Shown: positions 2,671-55,155, numbered from the stretch's first letter. The stretch is DNA of 64,000 nt from Lytechinus pictus (GCF_037042905.1 NC_087260.1:1860001-1924000); one strand, 5' to 3'. Program-made: numbers and translations. Notes: generated by a model not told the origin, from the sequence alone.

Positions 2671-5600
2671 ATCAAATAAACTTCGAATACGTTCCTAGAC
2701 AAAGTTGATCTTATTCTCTACTTTTAATGATCGGTGCTTCAGTGCACTTTATATCCTTGAATGTGAGAGGGCTTCGGGATCATCTGAAGCGAAGTAAGAT
2801 TTTTCTTTGGTTAAATCAACAGAAAAGTGATATCGTGTTTTTACAAGAAACGTACTGGACAAGTGATCTAGAACCTAAAATTAGAAATGAATGGAAAGGC
2901 CAATGTTATTTTAATCATGGAACGAACCATTCGAAAGGGGTTGCAGTTCTGATTAAAAATAAGCTTCACATTGAAAACATATGTAGCAAAGCTAAAGGAG
3001 ATGGTAGAATACTTAATTTGTCTTTCACATGTCAAGGTGAATGTTTTAATTGTATTAACATTTATGCACCCACCAAACGATCTGATAAATGTTCATTTTA
3101 TAAAAATTTTATGAGTTGGATTAAAAACGTTGTAAATCCAAATGAGAAAATGATTTTTGGTGGAGATTGGAATTATGCTCAAAACAAAAAATTAGACACA
3201 CAAGGAATTTTATATACATATGGTGCAGATGATTATATCTCAAAGCTAAAAAAACAATACTTATTGTTAGATATCTGGAGAAAGTTATATCCAGCATGTA
3301 AGCAATATACATGGAGGCAAAATTCCCTCAATTTATTTTCTCGTTTGGATTATTGGCTTATTTCAAGAGACCTTAGCCAATATGTTCTCTCTACGGATAT
3401 CAGACCATGTCTCAATTGTGACCACAATGCTATTTCATTGAAATTAAAACTTTTTAACGACGTGCGAGGAAGGGGTTACTGGAAATTTAATAGTGACCTA
3501 CTTAAAGATGATATATATAGGTTGAATATCGGAAATGTAATATATAAATGTAAATTGAAATATGAGAACCTTGATGCTCAAGGAAAGTGGGAAATGTGTA
3601 AAGTTAGAATAAAAGAATATACAATTAAATATGCTACAGATGTACAACGAAAAAAGAGAGAAAAACTTGTTCAATTGGAAAAGCAATATTTTTTATTGAA
3701 CAAAGAAATGGACAGTAGTCCTAATGATAGAAATGTCGAAGAAATCAATAAAATAAGGAAAGATATCGATGATTTGTATAATTATAAATGTAAAGGAGCT
3801 TACATAAGATCGAGAGAGAAGTGGATGGAGGAAGGTGAAAAATCAACAAAGTACTTTCTTGGCCTTGAAAAAAGAAACGGAAAAAAGAAAGAAGTTGATT
3901 GCCTAGAACACAACGGTAAAACCATCACTGATAAGGTGAAAATATTACAGAGATTACGTAAATATTATGATGATTTATATAAAAACCTTAATTCTATTAG
4001 TGATTTGGAGTACGAAAAATATTTATTTCATACAAATATACAAATCCTAAATGAAAATGAAGCATCGAGTTGTGAAGGTGATATAACCGAAAAGGAATGT
4101 GCTGAGGCTCTGTCAAGAATGCAGAATAATAAATCACCAGGTAGCGACGGCCTCACAGCCGAGTTTTATAAATGCTTTTGGAGCAAGCTAAAAGAAATGT
4201 TAATGAACAGTTTAAATGAAGGACATAGAAAGCAGCAATTATCTCCAAGTCAAAACATGGCCATGTTGGCGTTATTGTTTAAAAAAGGAAATAAAAACAT
4301 CATTCATAACTGGAGACCAATATCAATCCTAAATGTGGATTACAAAATTCTTGCACAAGTTCTTGCCAAACGACTACAAAATGTAATAACGAGCATTGTA
4401 TCTCCCGATCAAAGTGGTTTTATTAGAGAAAGGTCTTCAGCCGAAAATATACGTCTAGTGCAAGATATAATTGATTATTATCAGGGCATAAAAGCCCCGG
4501 GCATAATTATGTTTCTGGATTTTGAAAAAGCCTATGACAACATAAGTCATAATTTTCTATTTTACCTTTTAAAAAGATTAAATTTTGGAAATTCATTCAT
4601 TCGGTGGATTCAATCGATGTATAAAAACGCAAAAGGCCGTGTGCTAAATCATGGCTGGATCTCTGAATCTTTTCAAATTAAAAGAGGTGTAAGGCAGGGG
4701 TGCCCCCTCTCATCACTACTTTTTATTATTGTTGCAGAAGTTTTGGCGACGAAAATTAAACAGAATCATAAAATTGAAGGTCTCAGTTTACCGATTTCGC
4801 AGTTGAATGATGATCAAGTAGAAGTAAAAATATCCCAATTTGCAGATGATACAACTATATTTATGAAAAATAAAAATTCTCTTTCTAATTTGATGGAAGA
4901 ATTAATACTATTTGGTTCAAATGCTGGGCCAAGGATTAATTTGCAAAAAACCAAGCTGCTGAAGCTTAATATTGATATTGTCCCCGGACAAATAGAATGT
5001 ACTGAAGAACCGATAAAATATTTAGGTATATATGTTGGGAAAAATGAGAAAGATGTTGAAGATTATAATTGGCAAAATAAACTAGATAAGATACAAAATA
5101 TTATTAGAGTATGGAAACTAAGAAATCTAACATTTTTCGGAAAAATTATTATCATCAAAACTTTGTTGGTGTCTCAAATTGTGTATCCTGCAAAAGTGAT
5201 TAGAGTTCCCCAGAAAGTAATCAAATCTCTAAATAAAATGTTATATACTTTTATTTGGAATTCTTCAAAAGAAAAGGTTAAAAGAAATGTTTGTATAAAT
5301 AAAACAAACGAAGGTGGTCTTGGTATGGTCCACTTGGAATCGAAAATTGAATCGCTTAAGATTTCGTGGATAAGCAAGTTGTTAGAGCAAGGCGAACGTA
5401 GTTGGAAATTTCTTTTTAATTATTGGTTATCAAAGATTGGTGAAATTCCTTTATGTTTTGAATACAATATATCAACAAAAGATATGAATTTTCTTTGTAC
5501 AAAAGCAAATATACCTAGTTTTTACCATGATTTTTTTTGTAGCTGGTCTAAGTTAAGATATATTGGTATATTTGGAGTAAAAAACATTGAAAATGAAATC

Positions 5601-6617
5601 ATTTGGAATAACAGCAATATTACTTTTAATAAACGTATGTTGGTATATAAGAAATGGAAGCATGCAGGTATAATTAGGGTTAAAGATGTTATAAGAAATC
5701 GTCAATGGTTAGCACCAAATATTTTAAATAAATCTGTCTATTCTTCTCAGCTTTTATTTGATTTAGAATATGCTAAATTAAAAAAGTCTTTCCCTGTTTA
5801 TTGGTTGAATAAGTTGTTTAAGGAAAAGTATCCACTCGAATTAAAAAAAAGTGAACGAATCTTAATTTCATTAAAAAGTGGAGAACAAATAACTCTAGAT
5901 TATCTACCAACAAGAAAGATATATTCTTTATTATGTTCGGAGGTATCGGAAGAACCAGGCATTGTTTCTTTTTGGTCTAATCTTTTTTCATTACCAGTTT
6001 CCTTTAGTTGGAACCATGTATTTTATTTTAAGTTGCATTTAATTGTGGATAATAGAATTAGACAATTTAGTTTTAAATTTTTGAACAAGATTTTACCCTC
6101 AAGAGACAATTTATTTAAGTGGCATGTAGTAGAAAACAACTCATGTAACATTTGCGGAGAAGTTGATACCACTTTTCATTTCATACTGTATTGTAAATAT
6201 GTTCGATTTTTTTGGAAAATTATAGAAAGGTTGGTATTTTATATTTTCAAGATTACTATTTCTATAGATGAAAAAACATTAATCATAGGTTATGATCTGC
6301 AAAGTTCCAGCAATGTTATGTGTAATTTATTTTGTGTTATTGCTCAATTTGTTATTTATCGAAATTACATAAAAAGCATATTCAAAGGAAAAAGATATGA
6401 TGCGAATTCTTTATGGATTGAATTCAAGCTTACTATGATTATTTATTTAGAAAGTTTATGTAAACAAAAAAGCAAGTTCGGAATTTTGAAAAAATGTGAT
6501 ATTCAAAAAATTATTGCATTATTGAAGTGAATTGATTTTTTTTTTATTGTTTGTATATATATGTACATGTTATTGTGAATAAATACCTCGATTAAGAGGA
6601 TAAAAGAAAAAAAAAAA
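2671..6617 (+). mobile_element. L1/Tx1-type LINE insertion lacking ORF1
   Basis: AATAAA at 6578-6583 and A-rich tail at ~6602-6617. Candidate TSD aatttgtat at 2662-2670 and 6616-6624, extending to 13 bp with one mismatch (aatttgtatAtca / aatttgtatGtca). Confidence 0.85.
2727..6530 (+). CDS. L1/Tx1-clade non-LTR retrotransposon ORF2 (APE endonuclease + reverse transcriptase + C-terminal CCHC zinc knuckle), 1267 aa, uninterrupted
   Basis: APE motifs SLNVRGL, FLQET, NIYAP, GGDWN, SRLDYWL, CDHNAI; GYWKFN; EGEKSTKYF; RT motifs KSPGSDG, WRPISILNVDYKILA, LDFEKAYD, GVRQGCPLS, QFADD, KYLGI; EGGLG; C-terminal CNICGEVDTTFHFILYC. Confidence 0.97.
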   Translation: MIGASVHFISLNVRGLRDHLKRSKIFLWLNQQKSDIVFLQETYWTSDLEPKIRNEWKGQCYFNHGTNHSKGVAVLIKNKLHIENICSKAKGDGRILNLSFTCQGECFNCINIYAPTKRSDKCSFYKNFMSWIKNVVNPNEKMIFGGDWNYAQNKKLDTQGILYTYGADDYISKLKKQYLLLDIWRKLYPACKQYTWRQNSLNLFSRLDYWLISRDLSQYVLSTDIRPCLNCDHNAISLKLKLFNDVRGRGYWKFNSDLLKDDIYRLNIGNVIYKCKLKYENLDAQGKWEMCKVRIKEYTIKYATDVQRKKREKLVQLEKQYFLLNKEMDSSPNDRNVEEINKIRKDIDDLYNYKCKGAYIRSREKWMEEGEKSTKYFLGLEKRNGKKKEVDCLEHNGKTITDKVKILQRLRKYYDDLYKNLNSISDLEYEKYLFHTNIQILNENEASSCEGDITEKECAEALSRMQNNKSPGSDGLTAEFYKCFWSKLKEMLMNSLNEGHRKQQLSPSQNMAMLALLFKKGNKNIIHNWRPISILNVDYKILAQVLAKRLQNVITSIVSPDQSGFIRERSSAENIRLVQDIIDYYQGIKAPGIIMFLDFEKAYDNISHNFLFYLLKRLNFGNSFIRWIQSMYKNAKGRVLNHGWISESFQIKRGVRQGCPLSSLLFIIVAEVLATKIKQNHKIEGLSLPISQLNDDQVEVKISQFADDTTIFMKNKNSLSNLMEELILFGSNAGPRINLQKTKLLKLNIDIVPGQIECTEEPIKYLGIYVGKNEKDVEDYNWQNKLDKIQNIIRVWKLRNLTFFGKIIIIKTLLVSQIVYPAKVIRVPQKVIKSLNKMLYTFIWNSSKEKVKRNVCINKTNEGGLGMVHLESKIESLKISWISKLLEQGERSWKFLFNYWLSKIGEIPLCFEYNISTKDMNFLCTKANIPSFYHDFFCSWSKLRYIGIFGVKNIENEIIWNNSNITFNKRMLVYKKWKHAGIIRVKDVIRNRQWLAPNILNKSVYSSQLLFDLEYAKLKKSFPVYWLNKLFKEKYPLELKKSERILISLKSGEQITLDYLPTRKIYSLLCSEVSEEPGIVSFWSNLFSLPVSFSWNHVFYFKLHLIVDNRIRQFSFKFLNKILPSRDNLFKWHVVENNSCNICGEVDTTFHFILYCKYVRFFWKIIERLVFYIFKITISIDEKTLIIGYDLQSSSNVMCNLFCVIAQFVIYRNYIKSIFKGKRYDANSLWIEFKLTMIIYLESLCKQKSKFGILKKCDIQKIIALLK

Positions 6618-9282: not shown

Positions 9283-10475
9283 CAGTGGCGTACCGTGGGT
9301 CGCGGCATTGGAGGGGGGGGCACCAGCAAAAATTTTGAGTCCCTTAGTGAGCGCGCGAAGCGTGCTCAGTTGCCAGGTATACTGACCTAATAGAGACATT
9401 TTAAGGACAGTGCTATTAAACGGATATGTATCTCACTGATCAAAAAATGCGAGCGCGAAGCGCGAGCTGAAAATTTTTGATATTTAGACCTAAAATGGGA
9501 CATTATAAGCAAATTTTTTTAATCATGATACGTACCTGTCTCGCTAAATAAACAATACGAAGCGCGAGTTGAAATTTTTGTAAAGACCCCAAACATATAA
9601 GGACTATAATATAGTCCTTAAAATGTCCCTGCTGTTTGGGGTATATTATGTTTCAGGAATCCATTAAGAGTATACATCTCTCACCATAGTCATCTCATGC
9701 GAGTGCCAAGTATTTGCTGATTTTGTTACAATTACAAATTAATTTAAACACAGGGAACACTTGTGGTCATTGTAATCATGATTAACATACGCATCTCACT
9801 AATCAAATATTGCAAGCGCAAAGCGCGAGCTGAAAATTTAGGAAATTCAGACCTGAAGAGCATTCTAAGGTTTGTTTGTAGGAATTCACTATTAGACCAC
9901 ACGTATTTCACTACCCAAATTATGTGAGCGCGAAGCGCGAGCTGAAAATTTTTGATATTCAGATAAAAAGGACGTTTTCAAGGACTGATTTTAGGAATTC
10001 ATGAAGAGCAGACATATCTCACCAACCCACTAATGCGAACGTAAGCACGTACAGGGAATGTTTTATATTAAGACCTTAAAATGGGGCAATCACTTTAAGT
10101 AGTCATGAAAAAGAAGCAAATGCAATTACATAAAACAATGATAACTCGAAGTGCGAGGAAATATATTTGGTGTGTATAGACTTAAAATGGGAGGTTTTAT
10201 TACAACATGATTTTATATCTCGTTAAATAGAAAGTGCGAGCACCAGGAACAATGAAGATAGGCCCTGAGCAAATTATTTTTCATAAAGTTATGAAGAAAA
10301 AATTCTTATAATTATAATATTGCATAACATTATAATAAACAATATATTATTCTTTCCCACTATGTTTCTCTTCCTTTCTCCTTCTTTTTCTTCTTTTCCC
10401 CGTTTTTTTTTTTTAGGTCAGCCGATGGGGGGGGGGGGCACGTGCCCCCCATGTCCCCCCGTAGTTACGCCACTG
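9283..10475. mobile_element. hAT-type non-autonomous DNA transposon (1193 bp)
   Basis: Termini cagtggcgta...tacgccactg; perfect 8-bp TSD aaaccggg (9275-9282, 10476-10483); repeated internal gcgagcgcgaagcgcgagctgaaa motifs. Confidence 0.88.
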
Positions 10476-18492: not shown

Positions 18493-20090
18493 CCAGGGAC
18501 GGATCCAGCTTTCGTCAATGGGGGGGGGGGGGGGGGGGGGCGAAAAAAAAATCACCCACATTTTCCGTGATCGGCCGCTCAAACAACCGCGTAGGAAATA
18601 GGCCCCATTCCTTTCCGCGAATGGCGTCGAAGCGCTGAATTTGAGAAATTTCTCTGAAACTTTAACCTGTTATAATTTTGACATTTCTTAGACTTTAACT
18701 CGCTTAAGAAGAAAAATGAGCTCAAAATGTGAAAGGGATGATGCAAGCTAGAAGAGGGACTTAATCGCGAAGCACGGAAACCGTTCTCATTTATTTTAGA
18801 AGAAAAAAAATTGTGCAATTTCGCTCATATTAAAACATGTATTAAGCGCTTCCTTATATTTGATTAAGAAACTTCAGTGATATTAAAATTTTGAAATCAA
18901 TGCCACAAAACAAGACAGGAGATGGATGTGCAGCAATAATAGTAAAAAGTTTCATATCATACATACTTTAGCATATAACAAGGCACGAATTTAATGCCTC
19001 CCTCTTTGAGCAGATATACTTTGCCAAAAAACTACTTGCTGAACAATAGCGAAAGAAATTTGGGGAGTCGGGAAGTGACGGTAAGGTTTACCCGCTCCGA
19101 ACAGAAGAGCGGACCTTTTGTGTCAATGCAATGAAAAAATAATTGTCATACTCTTATACACCAAGGTATAATTTATGATTTCTGGCGAGAATATACAATT
19201 CCCACAGCCGGGAAGGGGAAAAACGGAGTAGAAAGAATTGTGGGATGCAAAAGGGAAAGGCGCTTTTGATATATTTCCCGCGCGGAGCGCGGAAGCAAAA
19301 TTTTGTTTGAAGAGAGAAGACCAACCTTTCGTTTATGTTTTTATTCTTTTGACAAAAAAGAAGGAATGGCAACAAAGCTATATCTTTCTTCGTCCCATTT
19401 CTCCTATCGCTTTTTTTTTCCTTTTCCTTTTTTTTTCTCTTTGGGGGCGTTTCGGGGGCGAACTTTCTGTAATTTTCAACGGGACAGGTATATAACTAAA
19501 CAATGCGTGCGCGAAGCTTGAGCGGAAAAAACGAGATTCAGACCAAAAAACGGGACACTCTATGAATGTTTTGTTTTAATCATGAAATGGATGGGTAACT
19601 CGGCCTTCCTATATATAATGCGAGCGCGAAGCACGAGCAAAAAAAATTGATATTGTGGTCTGAAATTTGATAACTTTGCACGTTTTAAATGATGAACCAG
19701 CTGCGCCTCTTAAAAAAAATGCGTGCGCATGTTTTATATTTAAACCTAGTATCTGGGCATTCGGAATATTTTTTTTTATCATGAAAATCAATAATGCGAG
19801 TGCGAAGCGCGAGCTGAAAATATTTGATATTCCGATCTGTGAAGGGAACAAATTAAGCATTATTTCAAGCACTATGTAGAAAAATTGTGAAGTGGATGTT
19901 GATCGCAATTAAGAAATGATGCAAGCGGGAAGTGCAAGCTGATTATTTTTACCTAGGACCGGGACATTCAAAGGACATTTTGTCATCATATGAAAATGAT
20001 GTCTTTCTTCCTATCCCTCTTTCTAAGCGCGAGATATTCCATTCTGAAAAGTAGGCCTATGGGGGTCGGCCCGGCCGTTACGAGGCCGTA
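18493..20090. mobile_element. Degenerate non-autonomous DNA transposon(s), hAT-like family
   Basis: Starts cagggacggatcc plus a G run; shares gcgagcgcgaagcgcgagctgaaaa motifs with 9283-10475 and ~61000-61940. Boundaries uncertain. Confidence 0.5.
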
Positions 20091-23866: not shown

Positions 23867-24133
23867 TATCCTACATAGATTAAATCCTGTAATGTGATTG
23901 GTTCAAATAGCATCATGTGACCAAATACATTTTAAATATGATGTTGCGTAACGTCAGTCATCGATATATTTTTCGCTGTACCAATATTCTGACGTCATTA
24001 TTTCAGATAACTGGATATTTAGTTAAACTCTCGGTTGGATTGGCAAAACTACTAAAAATTTCATAGTAAATGCGAGACCCACCTCGGATAAACAATTCCA
24101 CTATACTTTCTCAAAGCCTGATATATTTGTGTA
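23867..24133 (+). mobile_element. Older, internally deleted copy of the 516-bp hairpin element
   Basis: Matches both ends of the 28997-29512 unit (tatcctacatag... and ...caaagcctgatatatttg) but lacks the central part and the hairpin apex. Confidence 0.85.
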
Positions 24134-24738
24134 TTATCTTTTACCTACTGCAGCTTTTTCGTTATTTTGCAAAGAACATTATCACCGAAGGCGCCACTTA
24201 AATATTACGTGATCCACATTAGGCGCGAGGAGTTTGAACCATAAAGTTCGCAACTGCACGCGGCTCACGTCGGCGTATATATCACCAAATCTTTGCGCAC
24301 ACAACACGATCCAACTGCGATCCGATTTTGGAAAACATCTAGAATTCATGATAGCAATTGGTTTTACCATTCTAACTTGTAAAATCTTAACGGTCAATGA
24401 TGGAATATCGAAATCGAAATATAGGGATATCAAAATCAAAATTCTAGGATTTTACAAAGCCTCCTTGTTTAATGAAAGGGGGGGGGGGGGGGAGGAATCG
24501 CACATTAAATTCTAAATCTTAATGACGCCCAGGATTTTTTTTTTTCATCGACAGCGATATGAAAAAGATTCTTTGGATCTTCCATATTCAATGCAAAATG
24601 CGACTCCTAAGAAAATCGGGTCGGAGCCAATCCGTGTAGTGTGCGGCGGGTTCATAAATACTCCGATCCACAATGACCTTCACCACCTCCATCAACAAAT
24701 CTTCAATGCTTGTCGTTTGCAACTGTAACATCCACATT

Positions 24739-26339: not shown

Positions 26340-27234
26340 CTGAGGGGTAAAGATGAAGAAACAAACCTTTATGTTCCAATATTCCATTAAATGGATTCTA
26401 ATAAACTCGAAGTAACCCAGCCGATAATTTCAATTTGCAGTATATTCAATCTCTGGCTTTCATTTTTGCATGGTAGGCGCATTTGCAGGTTATACCACTT
26501 CATAACGACCAGCTGTTGACTCATCCAATGGTAGCTGATCTTGATTTTATGCTTATATTACGTATTGGCATTAGAAGTTCAAAAAGAAATGAGCATATTG
26601 ATAAAACTCAACCCTTCTTCCCCTCATTGTGCTCTTCATCATCCTTTTTATGGGTGTATTTGTTTCTTATCCAATCCCGTTAAAACTTTTCTCAAGTGCA
26701 GATCGAGGGGTCGATTCAGAGGGGGGGGGGGGGGATCCCCCCAATGAAAATTTGGAAGGGGACTATTCGCCCATCGATAATTTTAACAACTTGAAAAATG
26801 TGTAATATGCAATGCAAACATAATGTTTCAAAAACCACTGCAACGCACTGATAAACCTTTACACCTGGCTTAAAAATACTATTAAACCTGCAAAATTGAC
26901 ACTTTTTGGCGCGCTATGCTAAACGCTAATTCTGTATCATAAATTAGCACGCCGAAAAGTTAATCATCTTTTTTCACTTTTGCCCCCCCCCCTTCGAAAC
27001 ATGGATGGATCGATCGGCGTCCCTGCCGGAGGGGGTAAACAAAAAAGGGGTTCTTGGTAACAAAAACGGTCGACTATACATAAGAATTGATCGATCAACA
27101 TATTTTGCCTCCTGGAAAGATTTTGTCAAGCCCCTATCTCCCAGGAAAAGTCCAAAACCTGTCGATATTTTTGTTACCTTTTTATGTACTTTTCCAGGAG
27201 AAGTAGGGGGTGCACCCTGATATCTTCAGTTTAC

Positions 27235-27524
27235 CTTAATCCGTCTCTCCTCGCCAAGGAGGTGGCGCAGGTGCCTTTCGCGTGATTTAGATTCGTGAAC
27301 TTCCTGGGTGACGCGACAGAGCTGCTGTCCGGCGCTATCGATACAGGCCTGCCATTGGTTGATCTGAACGCCCAACGACCCCTGACTATCCAGGGCAGCC
27401 TGGAGTGACCGCTGAAGAGATTCGTTCTCTGCTCGGAGAACCTCCAATTGACTCTCGTACTTCCTCATCTGCTCGTTCGTCAAGGGAAGGTCATGTTCGT
27501 CTGGGAGAGAATCGGGCAGCCAAG
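27235..27524 (-). CDS. Uncharacterised protein, coiled-coil exon
   Basis: aatgtag|CT (phase 1)...ATTAAG|gtaaac (phase 0); heptad-like YESQLEVLRAENESLQRSLQAAL. Confidence 0.8.
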
Positions 27525-28166
27525 CTACATTAATCGGGAGAGGATCAGATAACAAAACAAGTAGAGAAATGGAATTAACAATTGTGCATACATTTCATTT
27601 TTAAACCCATGAATGACACAGCCGTGGATACTGGCACTTGTCATGGAATGCTTTTCTTCATATCAGAATGATAAAACTTCAGTTCATAGCATATTTCATT
27701 GCCATCCTTGGCTAGAGAAAAAAAAACCCATAATATTGGCAGTCGTCATTGTGGTATTTTTTTATCAAGAATAAAGTTCAATTGTTCGACAATTATGTTT
27801 GTGCGCATCATGATCTGCGCATAATGATCTGCGCATATTTTACACTGCGCACTCACAATGAATGAAGTGATTAATCAGCTGTATGTATCAGCTGCATGTA
27901 TTTTTCTCAACTGCAGATTTTATGAAGCTAATAAACTGGAATTATTCCATGGACCATATTTCTGAATTTCTCAACAATTTCAAAATACTTTACATTGTAG
28001 TGCTGCAAAGCATGACGAATATTACCCGAGTTGGAATAATTGGTAAAGTGGTTTTAGAATTTTTCCTCCACATATTGTAGATACAAAGCTTTTGATGCGT
28101 TATCTTTCGCGCAATATCTAAGAACTGAGAGTGCTGTTAGACTTGGAATAGCAAACAATTAAATAG

Positions 28167-30036
28167 TAAACAAATATATCAGGCTTTGAGAAAGTATAGT
28201 GGAATTATTTATCCGAGGTTGGTCTGGCAATTACTATTTTTCCCGAGGGGCGAAGCCCCGAGGGAAATATAGTAGTTTTGCCAGTCCAACCGAGAATTTC
28301 CACTATGCTTTCGAATAAAACGCCTGATATATTTGTTTTATATCCTACTTTCAATAATTTATAACCAAAATCTATGCGCTGAGCATGCAAAGTCCTGTTA
28401 CTTGCGTTGAATTACCTACTTTTCTCCGAGCCACCGCGCTCAGCGGAACGCAGATTAGTGTCTGCGCTGACGCATCGCGCTGGACTTGCGCGCCCGGGAG
28501 AGAGAGCGCGCAAGCCGGTGCGCCGAAATATCCAGTTTTGTGAAATAATGACGTCAGAATATTGGTATATCCAAAAATATATCGAGGTCTGACGTCACGC
28601 AACATCATAGTTGAAATATATTAGGTCACATGATGCTACTTGAACCAATCACTATACAGGATTTACTCTATGTAGGATATAATAAACAAATATATCAGGC
28701 TTTGAGAAAGTATAGTGGAATTATTTATCCGAGGTTGGTCTGGCAATTACTATTTTTCCCGAGGGGCGAAGCCCCGAGGGAAATATAGTAGTTTTGCCAG
28801 TCCAACCGAGAATTTCCACTATGCTTTCGAATGAAACGCCTGATATATTTGTTTTATATCCTACTTTCAATAATTTATAACCAAAATCTATGCGCTGAGC
28901 ATGCAAAGTCCTGTTACTTGCGTTGAATTACCTACTTTTCTCCGAGCCACCACAGGATTTACTCTATGTAGGATATAATCCCTAATATATATATTGTTAT
29001 ATCCTACATAGATTGAATCCTGTATAGTGATTGGTTCAAGTAGCATCATGTGACCGAATATATTTCAACTATGATGTTGCGTGACGTCAGACCTCGATAT
29101 ATTTTTGGATATACCAATATTCTGACGTCATTATTTCACAAAACTGGATATTTCGGCGCACCGGCTTGCGCGCTCTCTCTCCCGGGCGCGCAAGTCCAGC
29201 GCGATGCGTCAGCGCAGACACTAATCTGCGTTCCGCTGAGCGCGGTGGCTCGGAGAAAAGTAGGTAATTCAACGCAAGTAACAGGACTTTGCATGCTCAG
29301 CACATAGATTTTGGTTATAAATTATTGAAAGTAGGATATAAAACAAATATATCAGGCGTTTCATTCGAAAGCATAGTGGAAATTCTCGGTTGGACTGGCA
29401 AAACTACTATATTTCCCTCGGGGCTTCGCCCCTCGGGAAAAATAGTAATTGCCAGACCAACCTCGGATAAATAATTCCACTATACTTTCTCAAAGCCTGA
29501 TATATTTGTTTATTATATCCTACATAGAGTAAATCCTGTATAGTGATTGGTTCAAGTAGCATCATGTGACCTAATATATTTCAACTATGATGTTGCGTGA
29601 CGTCAGACCTCGATATATTTTTGGATATACCAATATTATGACGTCATTATTTCACAAAACTGGATATCTCGGCGCACCGGTTTGCGCGCTCTCTCTCCCG
29701 GGCGCGCAAGTCCAGCGCGATGCGTCAGCGCAGACACTAATCTGCGTTCCGCTGAGCGCGGTGGCTCGGAGAAAAGTAGGTAATTCAACGCAAGTAACAG
29801 GACTTTGCATGCTCAGCGCATAGATTATGGTTATAAATTATTAAAAGTAGGATATAAAACAAATATATCAGGTGTTTCATTCGAAAGCATAGTGGGAATT
29901 ATTAATCCTCGGTTGGACTGGCAAAACTACTATATTTCCCTCGGGGCTTCGCCCCTCGGGGAAAAATAGTAATTGCCAGACCAACCTCAGATAAATAATT
30001 CCACTATACTTTCTCAAAGCCTGATATATTTGTTTA
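28167..30036. repeat. 1.87-kb palindromic array of four copies of a 516-bp non-coding element (two head-to-tail pairs in opposite orientation)
   Basis: Copy 1 28167-28682; copy 2 28683-28978 (220-bp internal deletion); 18-bp spacer 28979-28996; inverted copy 3 28997-29512; copy 4 29513-30036. The duplicated small ORFs in the track mirror this. Confidence 0.96.
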
Positions 30037-31246
30037 ATATTCATTATATTGCGAAATTTGATGATTTTTTATTGTTTTTTTTACTGAGTAATCATGGTAA
30101 CAGAGCTTTAAACTCAATGTTGTGATCTCGTGATGTCTAAAAATGCCAAATTCTTTTGAATGCGCAATTCTTAAGAACATCTATTTGGGTTAACTTTGAA
30201 GCTCTATAGCAAACAATCAAGCACATAGACCTATGTTAATTTGTGCATATTTGGAATATTCAGGTGCTAAAGTATTTATGTGCAAAGTATAATGAAAATG
30301 ACATGGATTTTCAATGTTTGGGAGCAAGACAATGGAACCATTCGCACTTTAGAAGGTATTATCAGACTTTTGCACGTTTTCGGCGCATTTTCGGCTGTTT
30401 CAAGCCAACTCGCAACACTTTAGACACTGATAGCACATGGACCCCATATTTTTAACTTCCCTAAGCCTTTGTAAAGCATTCTTCTACAATTTTATCGAAT
30501 ATGATGAAAATGACATGGATTTTTAATAAATTGCAGCTTGAATTATACTTTTAAAATTTTTGAGTAGATTTGTCCCTTAAGGAATCTTTTTTTTTTTTTT
30601 TTTTGGGGGGGGGGGGAGTTTATGCATCATTTTTGTCAAATGAGGGCCTGCTGACTCCAAATAGATTTATTTTGCCTATTAAAAGATATTCTCTTACTTT
30701 GGTATCCAGTTAGTTAGATATCCTGAAAGTTTGATGCGATATCGACAGAGTAAAGAGGCCATTTAAACTCATTTGGGGAATTCGTGAGGTCCAAGAGAGG
30801 CATAGTTATCTTGATTGCGCAACATTTCATATCATTCAAATACGGCTACTTTGAAGTCCCGTACAAAATAAGCACACCAAAGAAACTCTGCAAAATTTGA
30901 TGAAAAGGAAATGGACTTCATTTTAACTGGAACGTCCTTATCGCATTCATTACATATTCGTTCAAACTTTGATATAAATTTATTTTGACATTTTGATTTT
31001 TTTTTCTTGGGGGAATCTATTGGTCATTTTTATTATTAATTTCGTCACTCTTCTTTTAACTCATCAACACTCCCTTCGTCCTGCCTTCTTATCGATTTCA
31101 AAATAATTCACATTAATTGCTGAAATTTACATTTCTTGGGGAATGAAACCCAGCGTACACTAGAGGTGCATGGCACGATCGCACTAAGATCCGATTGCAA
31201 GAAAATCGACTGCGATCGGATTTGTCGCAGAAGAATCGCTGACCAG

Positions 31247-31976: not shown

Positions 31977-33000
31977 TCGAGCTCTGGGAGGAACCAAATG
32001 TGGTCTGGAAGCTCGTCCTAAGTCGGATATATCGCTGTTACCATAGTAGCAACCATAATTTTGCACACGAAACGCAGATCTAATGTTTCCGTTGCGGATG
32101 CGAAACGTAAAAAAATTCTCAGGTCACACAATTTGCATTGCAAGACAGTGTTTTGCGACGGGCCCAAAAGTCTTTTTCAAAATCATCAATATACCGTCGT
32201 AAATTCCGCCCGCGTTGCACAGCGAATAGTGGGTATTGGCAACTTGTTGCCTTCGGATACTCGTGCAATTGCATCGCATATAGTTTGCGCTGGGCTTAAG
32301 GTACTTACAATTGATATCATTGCTCATGACATCCTCATCGCACGTCGTCCACGTGTGGTCCGTTGTAGAAAGCTTGATAGCCGAGTTCAAACGAAAGTTC
32401 TGAAGGGGAATCTACAAACGGTAAGAAAAATATAGCGTACTTAATGAGTAATGAATCTTCCGAAAGGCTTTGCGTGTGACTTCGTGTGACTATTTTTACC
32501 AATAGCTCGCCCGCATTGACATTATCTCGCCAGTATCTCACACGCAATTTCCCGCATTAGCTCACGCAAGTCTGATTTGCACGCAGAAAAGTTTCGAACA
32601 TGCTCAAAACTTTTCCGCGAGTGATTGCCCGCAACTCACCCGTAATGCTTGCACGGAAGGATGCGATCACATATTGACGGTTAAGATAACGGTTAATTCG
32701 CGATGGTTTTCCACAAAGGTGAATACAACGTCAACCAAAACTTGCAAGAATGCACCAGAATGGCACAAATAGGGTGAGTGGGAAGTATGACAATTAAGGG
32801 GAAATGTCACTGCGCAATGTGATGGGGACGGGAAGGGGTTCCTATTACCCCTTTAGCAACACTTGATCATGATATAACTGCATGAATCGGTCTCTCGCTT
32901 ACCAGATTTCCAATGTGATCCGTCACGGCTCCGACACCCATATGCTCAAGCGATCTAACAAGGATCTCCACCATGCCGTCCATCCGTTTGTTACGCTCAC

Positions 33001-38380: not shown

Positions 38381-39282
38381 AACAAGTGGAATGCCTCTGG
38401 CCGTCTCACCTGCATCACGCGATTCAATATAGCAGCAGTGCTGATTTTGAAAACTACTATAACTCGCACAAGATGTTCAGTGATACTTGGTTACTCTTAT
38501 TTCCACGTTTTATGAACTAGACCAATACACTTATAGAGATATGATGACCTTACATGACCTTTGACCTTGATCATGTGACCTGAAACTCGCACAGGATGTT
38601 CAGTGATACTTGATTACTATTATGTCCAAGTTTTATGAACTAGACCAACACACTTTCAAATTTATGGCTGTAATTCAACAAATACCCCAATTTGGCCAAA
38701 GTTCATTGACCCTAAATGACCTTTGACCTTGATCATGTGACCTGAAACTTGCACAGGATGTTCAGTAATACTTGATTACTATTATGTCCAAGTTTCATGA
38801 ATCAGATCCATAAACTTTCAAAGTTATGATGGTAATTCAACAGATACCCCCAATTCGGCCAAAGTTCATTGACCCTTGGTCATGTGATGTGAAACTCATG
38901 CAGGATGTTCAGTGATACTTGATTAACCTTATGTATAAGTTTCATGAACTAGGTCCATATATTTTCTAAGTTATGATGACATTTCAAAAACTTAACCTTA
39001 GGTTAAGATTTTGATGTTGATTCCCCCAACATGGTCTAAGTTCATTGACCCTAAATGACCTTTGACCTTGGTCATGTGACATGAAACTCAGGCAGGATGT
39101 TCAGTAATACTTGATTAACCTTATGGCCAAGTTTCATGAACTAGGTCCATATACTTTCTAAGTTATGCTGTCATTTCAAAAACTTAACCTCAGGTTAAGA
39201 TTTGGTGTTGACGCCGCCGCCGCCGTCGCCGTCGGAAAAGCGACGCCTATAGTCTCACTCTGCTATGCAGGTGAGACAAAAA
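38381..39282 (-). mobile_element. Helentron/HINE-type (DINE-1/pearl-like) non-autonomous element
   Basis: Subterminal inverted repeats gtctcacctgcat (38403-38415) / atgcaggtgagac (39265-39277); terminal hairpin gtctcac...gtgagac; (GCC)n microsatellite ~39213-39231; internal tandem repeats with tgacctttgacctt; A/T-run insertion site, no TSD. Confidence 0.8.
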
Positions 39283-46884: not shown

Positions 46885-48213
46885 TCATCGCCATATTGAC
46901 CAGTTTTCAAATTTGAAAAAGTTTCTAGTTTCCTCTCTGCTCATATCGAATACTTTATTGTTTGGTGTTACCCTGCAACCTTTAAACCACGGGGAATCGT
47001 TGAGATATTTATAAGCTTTCACATCACGTTTATCCTGGAGATGGGGTAGTGCCTTACAGAAGATTGTAGGTCGCGTTGGGAAGGTGAGGACCACTTCTCC
47101 TTTAGTACGCCAGTCATAAAATTTACGATACGCTTCATCGTCTTTGTCGAGACGCTTCAGGAACGCTACAAAGTTGCCAACTGAGTCGTAGTCGCTGAAG
47201 TGAATGTAGGAGTTAGGAGGTGCCACTGCCTCGTAAGATTCTTTCTTGGAACCAAGCACAATTGGCACCGTGCCATAAGACAGCGACTGCAGCCAAAACT
47301 TCTCGGTGATGTAGTCTTTGCACTCTGAATTGGGAATAGCGAAATAAAACTTATAGCGCGCCATGAGTTTGTTGCATTCGTCAGATCGTCTTGGGAGACA
47401 CTCTTTCCGACCGCAGAGTCCGTAGTCCTCAAGCGGGAGAACGTCTCGCATGCGCTTGATGAATTCAACACGTGGCCAGAATCCATGGCAGTTGCTTGAC
47501 ATCCACGATACCATTCCTTCCTTGCCCAGGAGTGGATCCGGGAGCCGACGTGTCTCCAAAGCTTGTTTGGAGCTCACATTAAGAGCTTCTGTTGACTCAT
47601 CAAACGACCGGTAGTAACCAAAAGGAACCACGATGTCCGAATCTAAATCATAGGTCATTAAGAGATGATATTTAAGACGCATCACATCGAAATCTCGCGT
47701 CCACTTCAGGACACGCAATGGCGTTTCAGTGCTGAAGTATATCCACGTCTGACCTGGACTGGGCTCCCACTCCATCAGCCTCTTGAGTTGTTCTCTTCCT
47801 TCGCCTCGGAATTCGGTGGGAACCAGTCCAAAGACGATGACATCTTTCCCCTCAAGGTAGTCCACATTACCCCCTCTGGTGAGGACGATGTCGCAGTCAT
47901 ATCCCTCAGAAACACAATCGACATCTGCAGCGTCCAGGGGTTGATTACTCCTTTGAAATAGGTCCATATATCTATGCAGTTCCGGGATGTGGCGCATTTC
48001 TCTGTCGCTGCCAAATATGTGCACATGTTTCACACAACCCGCTTTGGCAAACAGAGACTGGGAGACCGACTCCTCACCCTCGACAGGATCATTTTCAGAT
48101 AGTGACATCTCGGCTTTTCTGTGACCGTAGTTACGCTGGGACGTAATCCTCCATCCTGCTAATATTCCGATGAAAGTCAAGATACCCAGGGCAATCGCCA
48201 GGATCAGAGATTT
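46885..48213 (-). CDS. Alpha-1,3/4-fucosyltransferase (GT10), main coding exon
   Basis: Acceptor tttttcag|AAA (phase 0) gives KSLILAIALGILTFIGILAGWR (type II TM anchor); GT10 motifs QTWIYFSTETP, MTY..DSDIVVPFG, SWMSSNC...R, YGLCG, YKFYFAIPNS..DYITEKFW..L..GTVPIVLG, PPNSYIHFSDY, YRKFYDWR. Confidence 0.95.
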   Translation of the reverse strand, partial: KSLILAIALGILTFIGILAGWRITSQRNYGHRKAEMSLSENDPVEGEESVSQSLFAKAGCVKHVHIFGSDREMRHIPELHRYMDLFQRSNQPLDAADVDCVSEGYDCDIVLTRGGNVDYLEGKDVIVFGLVPTEFRGEGREQLKRLMEWEPSPGQTWIYFSTETPLRVLKWTRDFDVMRLKYHLLMTYDLDSDIVVPFGYYRSFDESTEALNVSSKQALETRRLPDPLLGKEGMVSWMSSNCHGFWPRVEFIKRMRDVLPLEDYGLCGRKECLPRRSDECNKLMARYKFYFAIPNSECKDYITEKFWLQSLSYGTVPIVLGSKKESYEAVAPPNSYIHFSDYDSVGNFVAFLKRLDKDDEAYRKFYDWRTKGEVVLTFPTRPTIFCKALPHLQDKRDVKAYKYLNDSPWFKGCRVTPNNKVFDMSREETRNFFKFENWSIWR

Positions 48214-51710: not shown

Positions 51711-52010
51711 GTTAGATCTATTTTTCAGAACACTTAAATACGTTATATCGTGTCTCACTAACAATTTTCCTGCATATACCTATAGTCCAGTCAATCTAGC
51801 CAGAATAGGGGGGTAACCCACCACTAATTGCAACACGAGATATTCCACTGAAATGCTTTCCAGGAAGGTCCCCTAAACAACATACTAAAAGTCCCAAGAA
51901 ATCCAAGCAGTGGAAATTTATGAAATTTGCATATTATGCAAATCAGCCATGAAAAATTAGAAAAAGAAGGGAAATAATCCAAAGATTACAAATTAAATGT
52001 CCATTAAATG

Positions 52011-55000
52011 TACAATTTTATCATGAAAATGTATATAAAACAAGAAATAAACAGGTACAAATTATTTTGACTGGGATCGCGATACTGACCAAAGATAGAA
52101 TAACTGACTAGTAGTCCAGTCAATATAGGGTTTGACCCACCACTAATTGCAACACGAGATATTCCACTGCAATGCTTTCAAGGAAGGTCCCCTAAACAAC
52201 ATACTAAAAGTCCCAAGAAATCCAAGCAGTGGAAATTTATGAAATTTGCATATTATGCAAATTAGCCTTAAAAATCTAGAAAAAATAAGGAACATAGCCC
52301 AAAGATTACAAATTGAGTGTCCAAAACAATTTAATTTGAATGGAAATTCATGATAAATAACTGAATTTAATGTTTTTAATCAAGAGTGCAAAAATTTCTA
52401 CCTCATTTGCATATTATGCATATAAGCATCCTTATATAGAAAAAATGTCAAGATATTGTGATTTTTCTCATATAGACTGCTTGAAAACGTTTCATTAATG
52501 TTGACATATGCTACTATATCACTAAGCATGATAATTCATCTCAATGCCTGAAAATTAATTTGCATATTATGCAAATTAGCCATTAAAAAAAATAGAAAAT
52601 GAGGAAATCAAGCAAAAGATTACAAATTAAATGTCCACAGCAAGTAATTTTGAACAAAAGTTCATGATGAATAAATAAGTTCAATATCTTTATTCAAAAA
52701 AGCTAGCAAATCTGCCTCATTTGCATATTATGCAAATAAGTATCCTTATATGGAAAATGTCAAGAAATTTTGATTTTTATCACATTGACTGCAGTGAAAA
52801 CATTTCAGTTTTTTCAAATTAATATGCTGCTATCACTAAGCATTCAAATCTATCCTAATATGATTTATATTCAAGGAAAAATACTGGAAATATGTTCTTC
52901 GCTTCCTAAGCCGCGTTGTTACTCTGACAAGATGATGGGATTGGCAAGAACAAAGCACAGTATTTGAATTGGTGTGTAGTTTGTTAGAGTTGACAACCCT
53001 TTCTTATATGGATGGGAACGACTCAGACTTTCTTGAAATTTCACCGTATAATCATGATAAAGGGAGGAAAAGCAAACTTATGGCAGGTAGGATCTGATAG
53101 GTAGGATCTGGTGAGTAGTCTCATTAAGAAATGTAGCAGAGATTCCGTCTAGCCTAGTAGCTTCATGCAGGTTTTTTTCTTTAACAATTTCTTCAGTAGT
53201 CTGGCTACACCTGCTTGACTAAACAATACGTTATCTGCATGGCCATATCTGGGTCAGGACTGGGTCCCAGGACTTGTAGATCAGCGTCATCATTATCATG
53301 ATCAGTGGTGAATACTAAGACTAAAAATATTTGCCTTCCTTTAATAATGATATTCCAATGTAGTCATAGCTATTGATATTAAGGGCTCCCAACATGCTAA
53401 TTGTTACAGCCTGGATCATTGTCAATCCGGTCAACAAATTATGTATTGTATGCTTGTCTACAAACCCTCTTATGGTCCTCTTTAATGCATTGTAGCAATT
53501 CTTAGCTTTACCTTACTGATGCTTTTGGAGCTCTAAAATGTGCAAGCCTTCCTAGCCTTTCTCTAAAACTCTTGACATCTTCCGACACAACTTATGTCCA
53601 TTGTCTCATTGAGGCAACTTGTGTCGGAAGAAGACATGGTCAACGGTGTGTTCTTGTTAAAGTCCTCGTGATTGGCATTCAGTCTCCTATGCTCGACTTG
53701 TCGGATTTCAGTACAGAGAGTTGTATGATTGTCCAAAGTACATCTGCATGACACTATTAAAGTCAGCATTCCTCCAGAAGAACATCCTTAGTCGCGTACC
53801 ATAATTACTAAAAGGTTTATTCCTCTGGATAACATCACAGTATACCCATGAGTAACACATTGTGGCAAATAAATCCTGGAAGTGGTACACACTGTCTAAT
53901 CAATGTTGGATGGTATTTGATGGTGATGTTAAGGGTGTTCCATTACGTTGTGTCCTCTTGTTGGAAAGGCAATAATCTGGCTTAGTCCTCCTTCTGGTTT
54001 GTTCATTGTCTCACTGAGGAATTTCCGTTTACCATAGATATCAGGAAATTAATATTATTTGCATACGACTTACTTACAAACTATAGCTTTAATATTTGGA
54101 GACGGTTGCCATAGGAGATTTATCAAAGAGGAAAGAACAGAAAATGGATGCTTCATCATGAAGCAGCAACTGGATTCAGCAAGAACGTCTAATCACGATT
54201 CCTGTATCTGAGAAAGATGCCTATAGCCTTCATCATGAATTTATGAATGGCTTTCATGTCACTCGTATAGGAAAATGCCCATTGTTACTCTTATTAAGCA
54301 TGCCCAGAGATCTTGTGATCCAAGCAAGTTCTCATATTCACCACCAAGACAAGTGATGATGATGATGACGGGTTCTTGTAAAGCGCCGGTATCCGCCTCA
54401 GCTGGGCGCTCATGGCGCTTGCTCAAAAATAGGAAATATCTCACAAATTTCAATGTCTTCAAACAGTGGAGGTTATAAATATTTAAGAAAACACACTGGT
54501 GATGCATCCCTCAAAAATTGCAAGTAGATTATCTATTCAAATTGGAATATGGCAATACCTTACATATGTTAGATACTTTTCTTTGCATAATATGCAAATT
54601 ACACTACAGACACTAAGCTGAATACAAATGTATTCAACGTCCTTAGTGATAGCAGCATGTAAATTTCAACATAAATGAAATTTTCAAGCAGTTAATGAGA
54701 GAAAATAACAATACCTTGACATTTTTCCATATAAGGATGCTTATTAGCATATTATGCAAATGAGGTAGATTTTTTTGCACTTTTGACAAAAAACATTGAA
54801 TACAGTCATTTATAATGAATTTTCACTCAAATTAAATTGTTTTGGACACTCAATTTGTAATCTTTGGGCTATGTTCCTTATTTTTTCTAGATTTTTAAGG
54901 CTAATTTGCATAATATGCAAATTTCATAAATTTCCACTGCTTGGATTTCTTGGGACTTTTAGTATGTTGTTTAGGGGACCTTCCTTGAAAGCATTGCAGT

Positions 55001-55155
55001 GGAATATCTCGTGTTGCAATTAGTGGTGGGTCAAACCCTATATTGACTGGACTACTAGTCAGTTATTCTATCTTTGGTCAGTATCGCGATCCCAGTCAAA
55101 ATAATTTGTACCTGTTTATTTCTTGTTTTATATACATTTTCATGATAAAATTGTA
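52011..55155. mobile_element. 3.1-kb long-TIR (foldback-like) DNA element with a decayed coding-like core; superfamily uncertain
   Basis: Perfect 329-bp inverted repeat 52011-52339 / 54827-55155, continuing imperfectly inward; ~313-bp internal tandem repeat; related short copy at ~51783-52110; no intact ORF inside. Confidence 0.85.

What the first reader, a model, noticed from the sequence alone, without database searches (positions are those of the whole stretch)
28167..28700. 516-bp non-coding element that carries an inverted internal copy of its own circle junction plus a ~170-nt terminal hairpin
Seen: the unit begins taaacaaatatatcaggc and ends gtaggatataa. The head-to-tail junction (28672-28700) reads, reverse-complemented, gcctgatatatttgtttATtatatcctac. 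The internal site 28322-28348 is gcctgatatatttgttttatatcctac, the same junction minus 2 nt. 28168-28340 folds as one long imperfect hairpin whose apex GGGGCGAAGCCCC (28247-28259) contains GCGAAGC. There is no TSD and no credible ORF. Known: d(GCGAAGC) is an exceptionally stable mini-hairpin; DIRS1 elements have an internal complementary region matching both ends, proposed to aid circularisation; tyrosine-recombinase elements (DIRS, Crypton) typically lack TSDs. Inference: this is a miniature non-autonomous element whose single strand could splint its own two ends into a circle, mobilised in trans by a YR or rolling-circle enzyme. It may correspond to an already catalogued Crypton-type family, but the self-splint geometry is a testable mechanism.
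Basis: partly seen in the sequence, partly recalled or inferred. Interest (0 to 1): 0.8.

Follow-up and report, generated by a model that had tools for sequence, protein, structure and literature searches.

The report
Protein-less sea-urchin jumping element with self-pairing ends
This is a real, recently active 516-bp non-coding mobile element of the sea urchin Lytechinus pictus whose two ends pair with an internal site beside a long hairpin, a layout that best matches a known kind of rolling-circle transposon (Helitron2/Helentron type) rather than a new class.

Summary
The 516-bp unit, the 172-nt hairpin with a GGGGCGAAGCCCC apex, and the internal site matching the inverted head-to-tail junction minus 2 nt are all present.

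New evidence:
- The window is Lytechinus pictus.
- The L. variegatus orthologue has an empty site. The 1.87-kb block is therefore a lineage-specific insertion with exact ends (T1...A516), no target duplication and no host loss.
- The block is two head-to-tail dimers inserted 18 bp apart in opposite orientation. The 18 host bases between them are inverted.
- An older, internally deleted solo copy (23867-24133) has the same ends and is shared by both species.

The "junction copy" consists of an 11-nt (16/20) inverted repeat between one terminus and a subterminal site, followed by a stem-loop that runs to the other terminus. That is the defining layout of Helitron2/Helentron (HLE2) non-autonomous elements. 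Here the stem-loop is about ten times longer than usual, and the T^T target rule is not met.

DIRS1, Ngaro, DDE-MITE and ribozyme readings fail their tests. A tyrosine-recombinase helper remains the main rival. No helper gene and no genome-wide copy set could be obtained.

Other first readers noted similar junction-complement elements elsewhere in this genome; these notes are unverified.

The parts
28167..28682 (+). Unit U1, full 516-bp element (T1...A516)
   Evidence: the exact 5' boundary comes from the L. variegatus empty site
28168..28338 (+). Long imperfect hairpin (unit positions 2-172). The basal 17-18 bp are perfect and the apex is GGGGCGAAGCCCC at 28247-28259
28322..28348 (+). Internal site equal to the inverted head-to-tail junction minus 2 nt. 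It is the last 17 nt of the hairpin plus the first 10 nt of the left asymmetric TIR
28338..28357 (+). Subterminal arm of the asymmetric TIR (TTATATCCTAC + 9 nt)
   Evidence: pair I2: 16/20 complementary, first 11 perfect
28663..28682 (+). Terminal arm of the asymmetric TIR (...GTAGGATATAA), the 3' end of the unit
   Evidence: pair I2
28672..28700 (+). Head-to-tail junction U1|U2 (A516|T1 at 28682|28683). An identical junction lies at 29512|29513 on the other strand
28485..28514 (+). GC-rich 9-bp stem hairpin CTTGCGCGC-N12-GCGCGCAAG inside the unit
   Evidence: pair I8
28549..28597 (+). Second internal hairpin TGACGTCAGA-N29-TCTGACGTCA (two CRE-like TGACGTCA palindromes)
   Evidence: pair I6
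28575..28625 (+). Two direct, degenerate copies of the 5'-terminal motif AAATATATCAGG (28575-28586 and 28614-28625). Possible binding-site repeats
   Evidence: families D1/D2
28683..28978 (+). Unit U2: positions 1-269 plus 490-516. A 220-bp deletion lies next to the palindrome centre
28979..28996 (.). 18-nt centre. It is host DNA, inverted relative to L. variegatus
   Evidence: the reverse-complement orientation scores 83, against 70 for the observed orientation and 67.6 +/- 3.3 for shuffles (0 of 2000 reach 83)
28997..29512 (-). Unit U3, full length, 5 differences from U1
29513..30036 (-). Unit U4, 524 bp, the most diverged unit (9 private substitutions plus 2 indels)
23867..24133 (-). Old solo copy (positions 1-71, 104-133, 360-513; about 87% identical to the units). 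It has the same 5' and 3' ends and is orthologously present in L. variegatus

Best explanation
A non-autonomous mobile element, recently active in Lytechinus pictus, built on the Helitron2/Helentron (HLE2, 'HINE') plan. One terminus carries an 11-20-nt repeat that is inverted at a subterminal site. A stem-loop fills the space between that site and the other terminus; here it is a 172-nt hairpin with a d(GCGAAGC)-type apex.

Inferred mechanism:
- A HUH Rep/helicase supplied in trans nicks between A516 and T1. In the folded single strand, or in a joined-end circle, that bond lies in a 2-nt bulge between two perfect helices.
- The element moves as a single-stranded, end-joined intermediate.
- It is pasted, without target duplication, after a short ATA-N motif that mimics its own 3' end (..ATAA).
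- The 3' end of a resident copy is therefore an ideal target, which gives exact head-to-tail dimers.
- Two nearby insertions in opposite orientation, followed by recombination between them (or one intramolecular replicative inversion), gave the 1.87-kb palindrome with the flipped 18-bp host segment.

Shown: the anatomy, the exact ends, the absence of a TSD, lineage-specific insertion, and reuse of the termini. Inferred: the enzyme class, the strand, the circle, and guide-like target choice.
For: - Anatomy: terminal/subterminal inverted repeat, 11/11 perfect and 16/20 overall. The hairpin runs from that repeat to the other terminus, and both helices appear in the MFE and centroid folds.
- Published HLE2 definition: short TIRs of 11-18 nt with a stem-loop after the right repeat, or before the left repeat in the 'HLE2-reverse' form (PMC11417382). 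Asymmetric TIRs plus hairpins, some with C-GAA-G loops, and joined-end circles in FoHeli (PMC5148889). HINE subTIRs of 12-15 bp plus a 3' palindrome (PMC4067079).
- Tandem Helitron insertions are reported in several taxa.
- Helentron proteins are reported in L. variegatus and S. purpuratus (supplementary file 8).
- The empty site in L. variegatus shows exact ends and no TSD.
- All three independent 5' flanks end in ATA-N, like the element's own 3' end ATAA.
- U3 is closer to U1 (5 differences) than to its tandem neighbour U4 (12 differences plus 2 indels). This fits stepwise insertion at a resident end rather than one concatemer.
- GCGNAGC mini-hairpins are typical of single-strand DNA replication origins (PMC13037366).
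Against: - No helper gene was found. No RepHel or recombinase domain occurs in the window.
- No longer copy with the same ends could be searched for.
- The HLE2 target rule (5' T, insertion upstream of T or within TT) fails at the best-defined site (G^C) and holds at only one of three sites.
- The stem-loop is about 172 nt and the subterminal repeat lies 172 nt from the end. Described HLE2 families have hairpin stems of 5-10 bp and repeats 20-60 nt from the end.
- There are only five copies, four of them nearly identical, so there is no covariation or target logo.
- An ATA-N repeat at both junctions is also what a Crypton-type recombinase would leave.
Confidence: 0.45

Rival explanations
1. 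A tyrosine-recombinase element (a Crypton-type DNA element, or a stripped DIRS-like retroelement). A circle carrying the joined ends recombines with a target that shares a few bases with the junction. The inverted internal copy is a second recombination site, or it folds with the junction into a hairpin site, as in CTX phage attP or integron attC.
For: - No TIR+TSD ends, and an exact junction in the tandem copies.
- A short repeat of similar sequence at both junctions in all three insertions: ATA-N before T1, and the element ends in ATAA. This is the only structural hallmark given for Cryptons (PMC8969392; PMC13465315).
- The internal site reads as two imperfect 10-nt inverted arms (7/10) around a 7-nt spacer, the size class of YR core sites (PMC3212892).
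- Inversion of the 18-bp host segment is what recombination between inverted sites would give.
- Earlier notes (unverified) report Crypton, Ngaro and ORF-less DIRS1-type families in this genome.
Against: - The shared core is only 3 nt, whereas canonical YR exchange needs 6-8 nt of overlap identity and Cryptons show 4-6 bp repeats.
- Animal Cryptons are reported to have no terminal repeats at all, yet this element has an 11-20-nt asymmetric repeat.
- The DIRS1 and Ngaro architectures both fail.
- The real junction has a 9-nt spacer, not 7.
- A 172-nt hairpin with a mini-hairpin apex has no role in double-strand YR recombination.
Confidence: 0.22
2. A rolling-circle or HUH-type element that is not a Helitron2/Helentron relative, or an as yet undescribed helper class that uses the internal site as a guide for both end cleavage and target choice (IS200/IS605-like logic).
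For: - The target rule differs from HLE2.
- The cleavage bond lies in a bulge at a hairpin foot, next to a sequence that pairs with the 3' end.
- The 5' flank of the solo copy matches the element's 3' end at 10 of 14 positions in register (pair I21).
Against: No such eukaryotic system is known. The flank similarity rests on one old copy in AT-rich DNA, and the other two flanks match only at ATA.
Confidence: 0.15
3. A DDE-type foldback or MITE composite. The 1.87-kb palindrome is the real transposon, with long TIRs made of tandem units (like FB, Tetris or sea-urchin TU elements) and a TA or TAA duplication hidden in its AT-rich ends.
For: The block begins and ends with the same inverted 17-nt motif, and its arms are 97-99% complementary. 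A TA at both outer ends can be read as a TSD.
Against: - The centre is host DNA also present at the empty site, so the block did not arrive as one piece.
- The empty site shows no duplicated bases.
- The solo copy has asymmetric ends, one hairpin end and one non-hairpin end.
Confidence: 0.05

Closest known systems
Helitron2/Helentron-type elements and their non-autonomous derivatives (HLE2; HINE/DINE-1; FoHeli; the sea-urchin Tsp family as reclassified in PMC4067079)
   Same: Short asymmetric terminal inverted repeat with one arm at the terminus and one subterminal. A stem-loop lies between the subterminal arm and the other terminus. No TSD, no coding capacity, and head-to-tail arrays. FoHeli also has hairpin loops of the C-GAA-G type. 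Helentron proteins are reported in Lytechinus.
   Different: The stem-loop is 172 nt (usual stems are 5-10 bp) and reaches the very last base, so the two termini abut. Insertion is not between T and T (G^C at the best-defined site). There is no sequence similarity to the Helentron-like element in the same window (about 38.4-39.3 kb). The helper is not identified.
DIRS1-type retrotransposons (ITRs plus internal complementary region)
   Same: An internal segment is complementary to the two element ends in the order 5'-end complement then 3'-end complement, and so matches the circle junction.
   Different: There are no inverted terminal repeats at the two termini. The long inverted arms are adjacent and form a hairpin at one end, and the linear form is opened at the edge of the palindrome, not at its centre. 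The internal site lies near the 5' end, not at the 3' side of an internal region. There is no RT, MT or YR.
Crypton DNA transposons
   Same: No TIR/TSD ends. A short repeat of similar sequence (ATA-N) lies at both junctions. A circular intermediate is presumed.
   Different: Animal Cryptons are reported to lack terminal repeats. The core shared with the target is only 3 nt. No YR partner is known for this family.
IS200/IS605 (IS608) single-strand transposition; folded single-strand sites of CTX phage and integron attC (working analogies only)
   Same: Hairpins at the ends. The cleavage position is set by pairing with a short sequence next to the hairpin foot. There are unpaired bases at the site, no TSD, and a joined-end single-strand circle.
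   Different: These are bacterial systems. No homology or enzyme link has been shown; the resemblance is geometric.

Membership tests
Helitron2/Helentron (HLE2) non-autonomous element | Short asymmetric TIRs (about 11-18 nt), one terminal and one subterminal | tested here: met
   GTAGGATATAA at the 3' terminus against TTATATCCTAC at positions 172-182. The repeat is 11/11 perfect and 16/20 overall.
Helitron2/Helentron (HLE2) non-autonomous element | Stem-loop between the subterminal repeat and the nearby terminus | tested here: met
   The hairpin at positions 2-172 fills exactly that interval. Its size is atypical: 172 nt, where described families have stems of 5-10 bp within 20-60 nt of the end.
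Helitron2/Helentron (HLE2) non-autonomous element | Terminal T and insertion upstream of a T or within TT | tested here: not met
   Both strands start with T. However, the empty site gives G^C at site 1. Site 2 is T^T in one orientation, and the solo copy is A^G/T. Only 1 of 3 sites fits.
Helitron2/Helentron (HLE2) non-autonomous element | No target site duplication | tested here: met
   The L. variegatus empty site has the same host length and no repeated bases.
Helitron2/Helentron (HLE2) non-autonomous element | Termini shared with an autonomous Rep/helicase(/endonuclease) element | not testable with these tools
   No sea-urchin genome search is available. No RepHel domain occurs in the window. 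Collection scans found nothing related.
DIRS1-type retrotransposon | Inverted terminal repeats at the two termini | tested here: not met
   The only long inverted repeat has adjacent arms at one end. The opposite terminus shares only the 11-20-nt repeat with a subterminal site.
DIRS1-type retrotransposon | Internal complementary region matching both ends, at the 3' side of the internal region | tested here: inconclusive
   The complementarity to both ends is real. However, the site is part of the hairpin near the 5' end and is missing from the old solo copy.
Ngaro/PAT-type (split direct repeats) | A1...B1-A2-B2 direct repeats of the termini | tested here: not met
   Within the unit the termini have no direct repeat beyond a degenerate 12-nt motif.
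Crypton | Short direct repeat at both termini, similar across copies | tested here: inconclusive
   ATA-N precedes T1 in 3 of 3 insertions, and the element ends in ATAA. This is only 3 nt in AT-rich DNA from three sites.
Crypton | Tyrosine recombinase encoded by autonomous copies with the same ends | not testable with these tools
DDE MITE / foldback transposon | Terminal inverted repeats plus a fixed-length TSD | tested here: not met
   The unit and solo ends are asymmetric. There is no TSD at the empty site, and the palindrome centre is host DNA.
Retrozyme / ribozyme-bearing tandem repeat, SINE | Self-cleaving ribozyme or tRNA-like Pol III module | tested here: not met
   The Rfam E-value scan gave only two far-sub-threshold chance hits. 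ARAGORN found none.

The most novel reading that the evidence does not exclude
The asymmetric repeat plus terminal hairpin is a working self-guide. In the single strand, one internal sequence holds the element's 3' end against the hairpin-borne 5' end and so presents the scissile bond in a 2-nt bulge. The same sequence also selects targets that mimic the 3' end, which would explain the exact tandem pile-ups. The 172-nt hairpin with its mini-hairpin apex would act as a second-strand origin. This would give Helitron2-type asymmetric TIRs a function (currently unknown). It would also be a eukaryotic parallel to IS608 guide logic.
Probability: 0.15. Interest if true: 0.7.

Novelty: new variant of a known kind. 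Interest (0 to 1): 0.4.

Why it matters
The role of the asymmetric terminal repeats of Helitron2/Helentron elements is not understood. This family shows the geometry in an extreme and clean form:
- The two termini abut on an internal complement, with the cleavage bond in a bulge.
- It has a dated, exact empty site.
- It was active recently in a laboratory sea-urchin species.

That makes two experiments practical: cleavage and strand-transfer assays with a Lytechinus Helentron Rep, and a search for joined-end circles. The palindromic block with a flipped host segment inside an intron also shows how such elements can build unstable inverted structures in genes.

Tried and rejected
- More copies. 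One exact-pattern scan of the metagenome collection gave two chance hits in an unrelated NACHT-like gene. Two scans of the viral collection and one of the prokaryotic genome collection gave nothing.
- Element ORFs. Exact look-ups of three ORFs in the element and one homology search found nothing.
- Earlier findings. Searches by sequence and by relatives were blank.
- Multi-copy TE proteins used to sample more Lytechinus DNA. The window's LINE ORF is not on record. The L. variegatus gypsy-like ORF has one place only.
- Ribozyme/retrozyme and tRNA-SINE readings are rejected.
- Alignment of the S. purpuratus orthologous intron failed; it is too diverged and carries no copy.
- Reading the tandem dimers as one rolling-circle concatemer is disfavoured. 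U3 and U4 differ more from each other than U3 does from U1, and all variants are private.
- Fold-back (inverted) duplication of one dimer is rejected, because the flanks are not inverted copies and both outer ends stop exactly at T1.
- An assembly artefact is rejected. The arms differ by a 220-bp deletion, an 8-bp indel and SNPs, and both flanks align to L. variegatus.
- The Tsp paper (PMC367020) is not held, so relatedness to Tsp could not be checked.

Full report
**What is there**

The stretch 28167-30036 consists of four copies of a 516-bp unit:
- U1, 28167-28682, plus strand, full length.
- U2, 28683-28978, plus strand. It holds unit positions 1-269 and then 490-516, so 220 bp are deleted.
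- An 18-nt centre, 28979-28996.
- U3, 28997-29512, minus strand, full length.
- U4, 29513-30036, minus strand, 524 bp.

These form two head-to-tail dimers placed tail to tail. Both outer ends are the unit's 5' end. A fifth copy lies at 23867-24133 on the minus strand. It is older (34 differences in 270 aligned positions) and keeps positions 1-71, 104-133 and 360-513. It starts and ends at the same unit positions as the others.

**Check of the observation**

The reverse complement of the junction (28672-28700) equals the internal site (28322-28348) plus two bases.

As single-stranded DNA the unit folds far better than shuffled controls (z = -11.7). Positions 2-172 form one imperfect hairpin. 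Its basal 17-18 bp and its apex GGGGCGAAGCCCC are perfect, and its middle is about 76% paired. Directly after the hairpin foot, TTATATCCTAC pairs with the last 11 nt of the unit, GTAGGATATAA. This helix appears in both the MFE and the centroid structure. It extends to 16/20 complementary positions. Chance expectation for it is about 6e-7.

Five A residues and T1 compete for four T residues at the three-way junction. Two bases at the nick are therefore unpaired (A516+T1 or T1+A2). It also means the nick is not a fully paired substrate for ligation.

ORFs in the block are at most 85 aa, and the look-ups and homology search run on them found no homologue. There is no ribozyme or other Rfam family and no tRNA-like module.

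**Species and empty site**

An exon next to the block identified the gene: LOC129279016 of Lytechinus pictus, with orthologues in L. variegatus and S. purpuratus. Locus L004 is the window itself, so the window is L. pictus GCA_037042905.1. The block lies in the intron between the exons at 27232-27526 and 32304-32413.

In the L. variegatus orthologue (L005) both flanks align, but the whole block is missing. The empty site, read in the window's orientation, is ...GCAAACAATAAATAG / CAATAAAAAATAAGGATAAA / ATCAATCATATGGCG....

The 18-nt centre of the L. pictus block is the host segment between two insertion points, and it is inverted:
- With the centre reverse-complemented, the reconstructed host sequence has the same length as in L. 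variegatus and aligns with score 83.
- The observed orientation scores 70.
- Shuffled centres score 67.6 +/- 3.3, and 0 of 2000 reach 83.

Four conclusions follow:
- The block arose in the L. pictus lineage. Units differ by 1-2%, whereas the flanks differ by 10-17% between the species.
- The element's ends are exactly T1 and A516.
- There is no target duplication and no loss of host bases.
- There were two insertion points 18 bp apart in opposite orientation.

The solo copy is present at the orthologous place in L. variegatus with essentially the same internal deletions. The family is therefore older than the species split and was active again afterwards.

**How the block formed (inferred)**

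All variants among U1-U4 are private. U4 carries 9 substitutions and 2 indels, U3 has 4 substitutions, and U1 and U2 have 1 each. U3 is closer to U1 than to its tandem neighbour U4. This argues against each dimer being a single rolling-circle concatemer. It fits stepwise insertion exactly at the end of a resident copy.

All three independent 5' flanks end in ATA-N (ATAG, ATAT, ATAA), like the element's own 3' end ATAA. The solo copy's flank matches the 3' end at 10 of 14 positions in register (pair I21). A target that mimics the element's 3' end would make a resident 3' end the best target, and this would explain the exact head-to-tail junctions.

The flipped centre has two possible origins. 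One is recombination between the two inverted arrays. The other is a single intramolecular replicative inversion. The data do not separate them. The 220-bp deletion in U2, 27 nt from the centre, is the kind of asymmetric deletion expected to stabilise a long palindrome.

**Classification**

- a short inverted repeat with one arm at a terminus;
- the other arm subterminal;
- a stem-loop filling the gap to the other terminus.

That is the published definition of Helitron2/Helentron-type elements (HLE2):
- TIRs of 11-18 nt with a stem-loop after the right repeat, or before the left one in "HLE2-reverse" (PMC11417382).
- Asymmetric TIRs with the 3' arm 20-40 bp from the end, hairpins (some with C-GAA-G loops) and joined-end products in Fusarium (PMC5148889).
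- SubTIRs of 12-15 bp plus a 3' palindrome in HINEs (PMC4067079).

Tandem insertions of Helitrons are reported in several taxa. Helentron proteins are listed for L. variegatus and S. purpuratus, and the sea-urchin Tsp family is treated as DINE-1-like. GCGNAGC mini-hairpins are characteristic of single-strand DNA replication origins (PMC13037366), which fits a single-strand phase.

Three points count against simple membership:
- The T^T target rule fails (G^C at site 1; 1 of 3 sites fits).
- The stem-loop is an order of magnitude longer than in described families.
- No helper with the same ends could be sought.

Other families were tested:
- DIRS1-type architecture fails. There are no ITRs at the two termini, and the palindrome is opened at its edge rather than its centre.
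- Ngaro-type split direct repeats are absent.
- A DDE MITE or foldback reading fails on the asymmetric solo ends, the missing TSD and the host-derived centre.
- A Crypton-type tyrosine recombinase remains possible. The ATA-N repeat at both junctions is its only structural hallmark. However, the shared core is only 3 nt, and animal Cryptons are described as lacking terminal repeats.

**Limits**

- No sea-urchin genome can be searched with these tools. Copy number, subfamilies, covariation between the internal site and the termini, a target logo and the helper all remain open.
- Only the single substitution in U4 at the edge of the internal site (G156 to A) bears on covariation, and it is uncompensated.
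- Earlier first-reader notes describe similar junction-complement elements of 479, 513 and 550 letters, and a near-intact Helentron polyprotein, elsewhere in this genome. These are leads, not evidence.

**Verdict**

The element is real, mobile and recently active. The "self-splint" geometry is real, but it is best read as the Helitron2/Helentron terminal layout in an exaggerated form rather than a DIRS- or Crypton-like novelty. The helper class is inferred, not shown.

Noticed in passing
window 38395-39280: A Helentron/DINE-like non-autonomous element of a different family. It has a 13-bp subterminal inverted repeat (GTCTCACCTGCAT ... ATGCAGGTGAGAC) and a short 3' hairpin (GTCTCAC/GTGAGAC). 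It also carries a (GCC)n tract and four to five ~162-bp tandem repeats rich in TGACCT direct repeats. It has no sequence similarity to the 516-bp unit.
   Followed up: partly
window 28979-28996 against L005 27260-27290: The 18-bp host segment between the two arrays is inverted relative to L. variegatus. This marks either recombination between the inverted arrays or an intramolecular replicative inversion.
   Followed up: yes
window 28951/28952 (U2): A 220-bp deletion (unit positions 270-489) lies 27 nt from the palindrome centre. It looks like a secondary deletion that makes a near-perfect ~1-kb palindrome asymmetric.
   Followed up: partly
window 2727-6530 (+): An uninterrupted 1267-aa ORF of a non-LTR retrotransposon (Exo_endo_phos + RVT_1 + zf-RVT), so possibly an active LINE copy. 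Its exact product is not on record in the gene-position collection.
   Followed up: partly
window 46885-48180 (-): A single-exon alpha-1,3-fucosyltransferase-like gene (Glyco_transf_10). It is annotated as a 455-aa product in L. pictus and L. variegatus.
   Followed up: partly
window 51809-55155: Another foldback-like structure, with 434-nt arms 97% complementary (52011-52444 / 54722-55155) and ~314-bp internal tandem repeats.
   Followed up: no
window 9424-9969, 19771-19841, 61430-61500: A dispersed ~71-nt repeat built around GAGCGCGAAGCGCGAGC, which is another GCGAAGC mini-hairpin core inside a palindrome. There are five copies in the window (family D7).
   Followed up: no
L005 3466-6333 (L. 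variegatus): An intact 955-aa gypsy-type RT-RNaseH-integrase ORF lies upstream of the orthologous gene in L. variegatus. That gene spans 24.8 kb there against 15.0 kb in L. pictus, so the locus differs by several lineage-specific insertions.
   Followed up: no
window 30583-30619 and 24478-24493: Long homopolymer runs: T16 directly followed by G11, and a G14 run near the solo copy.
   Followed up: no
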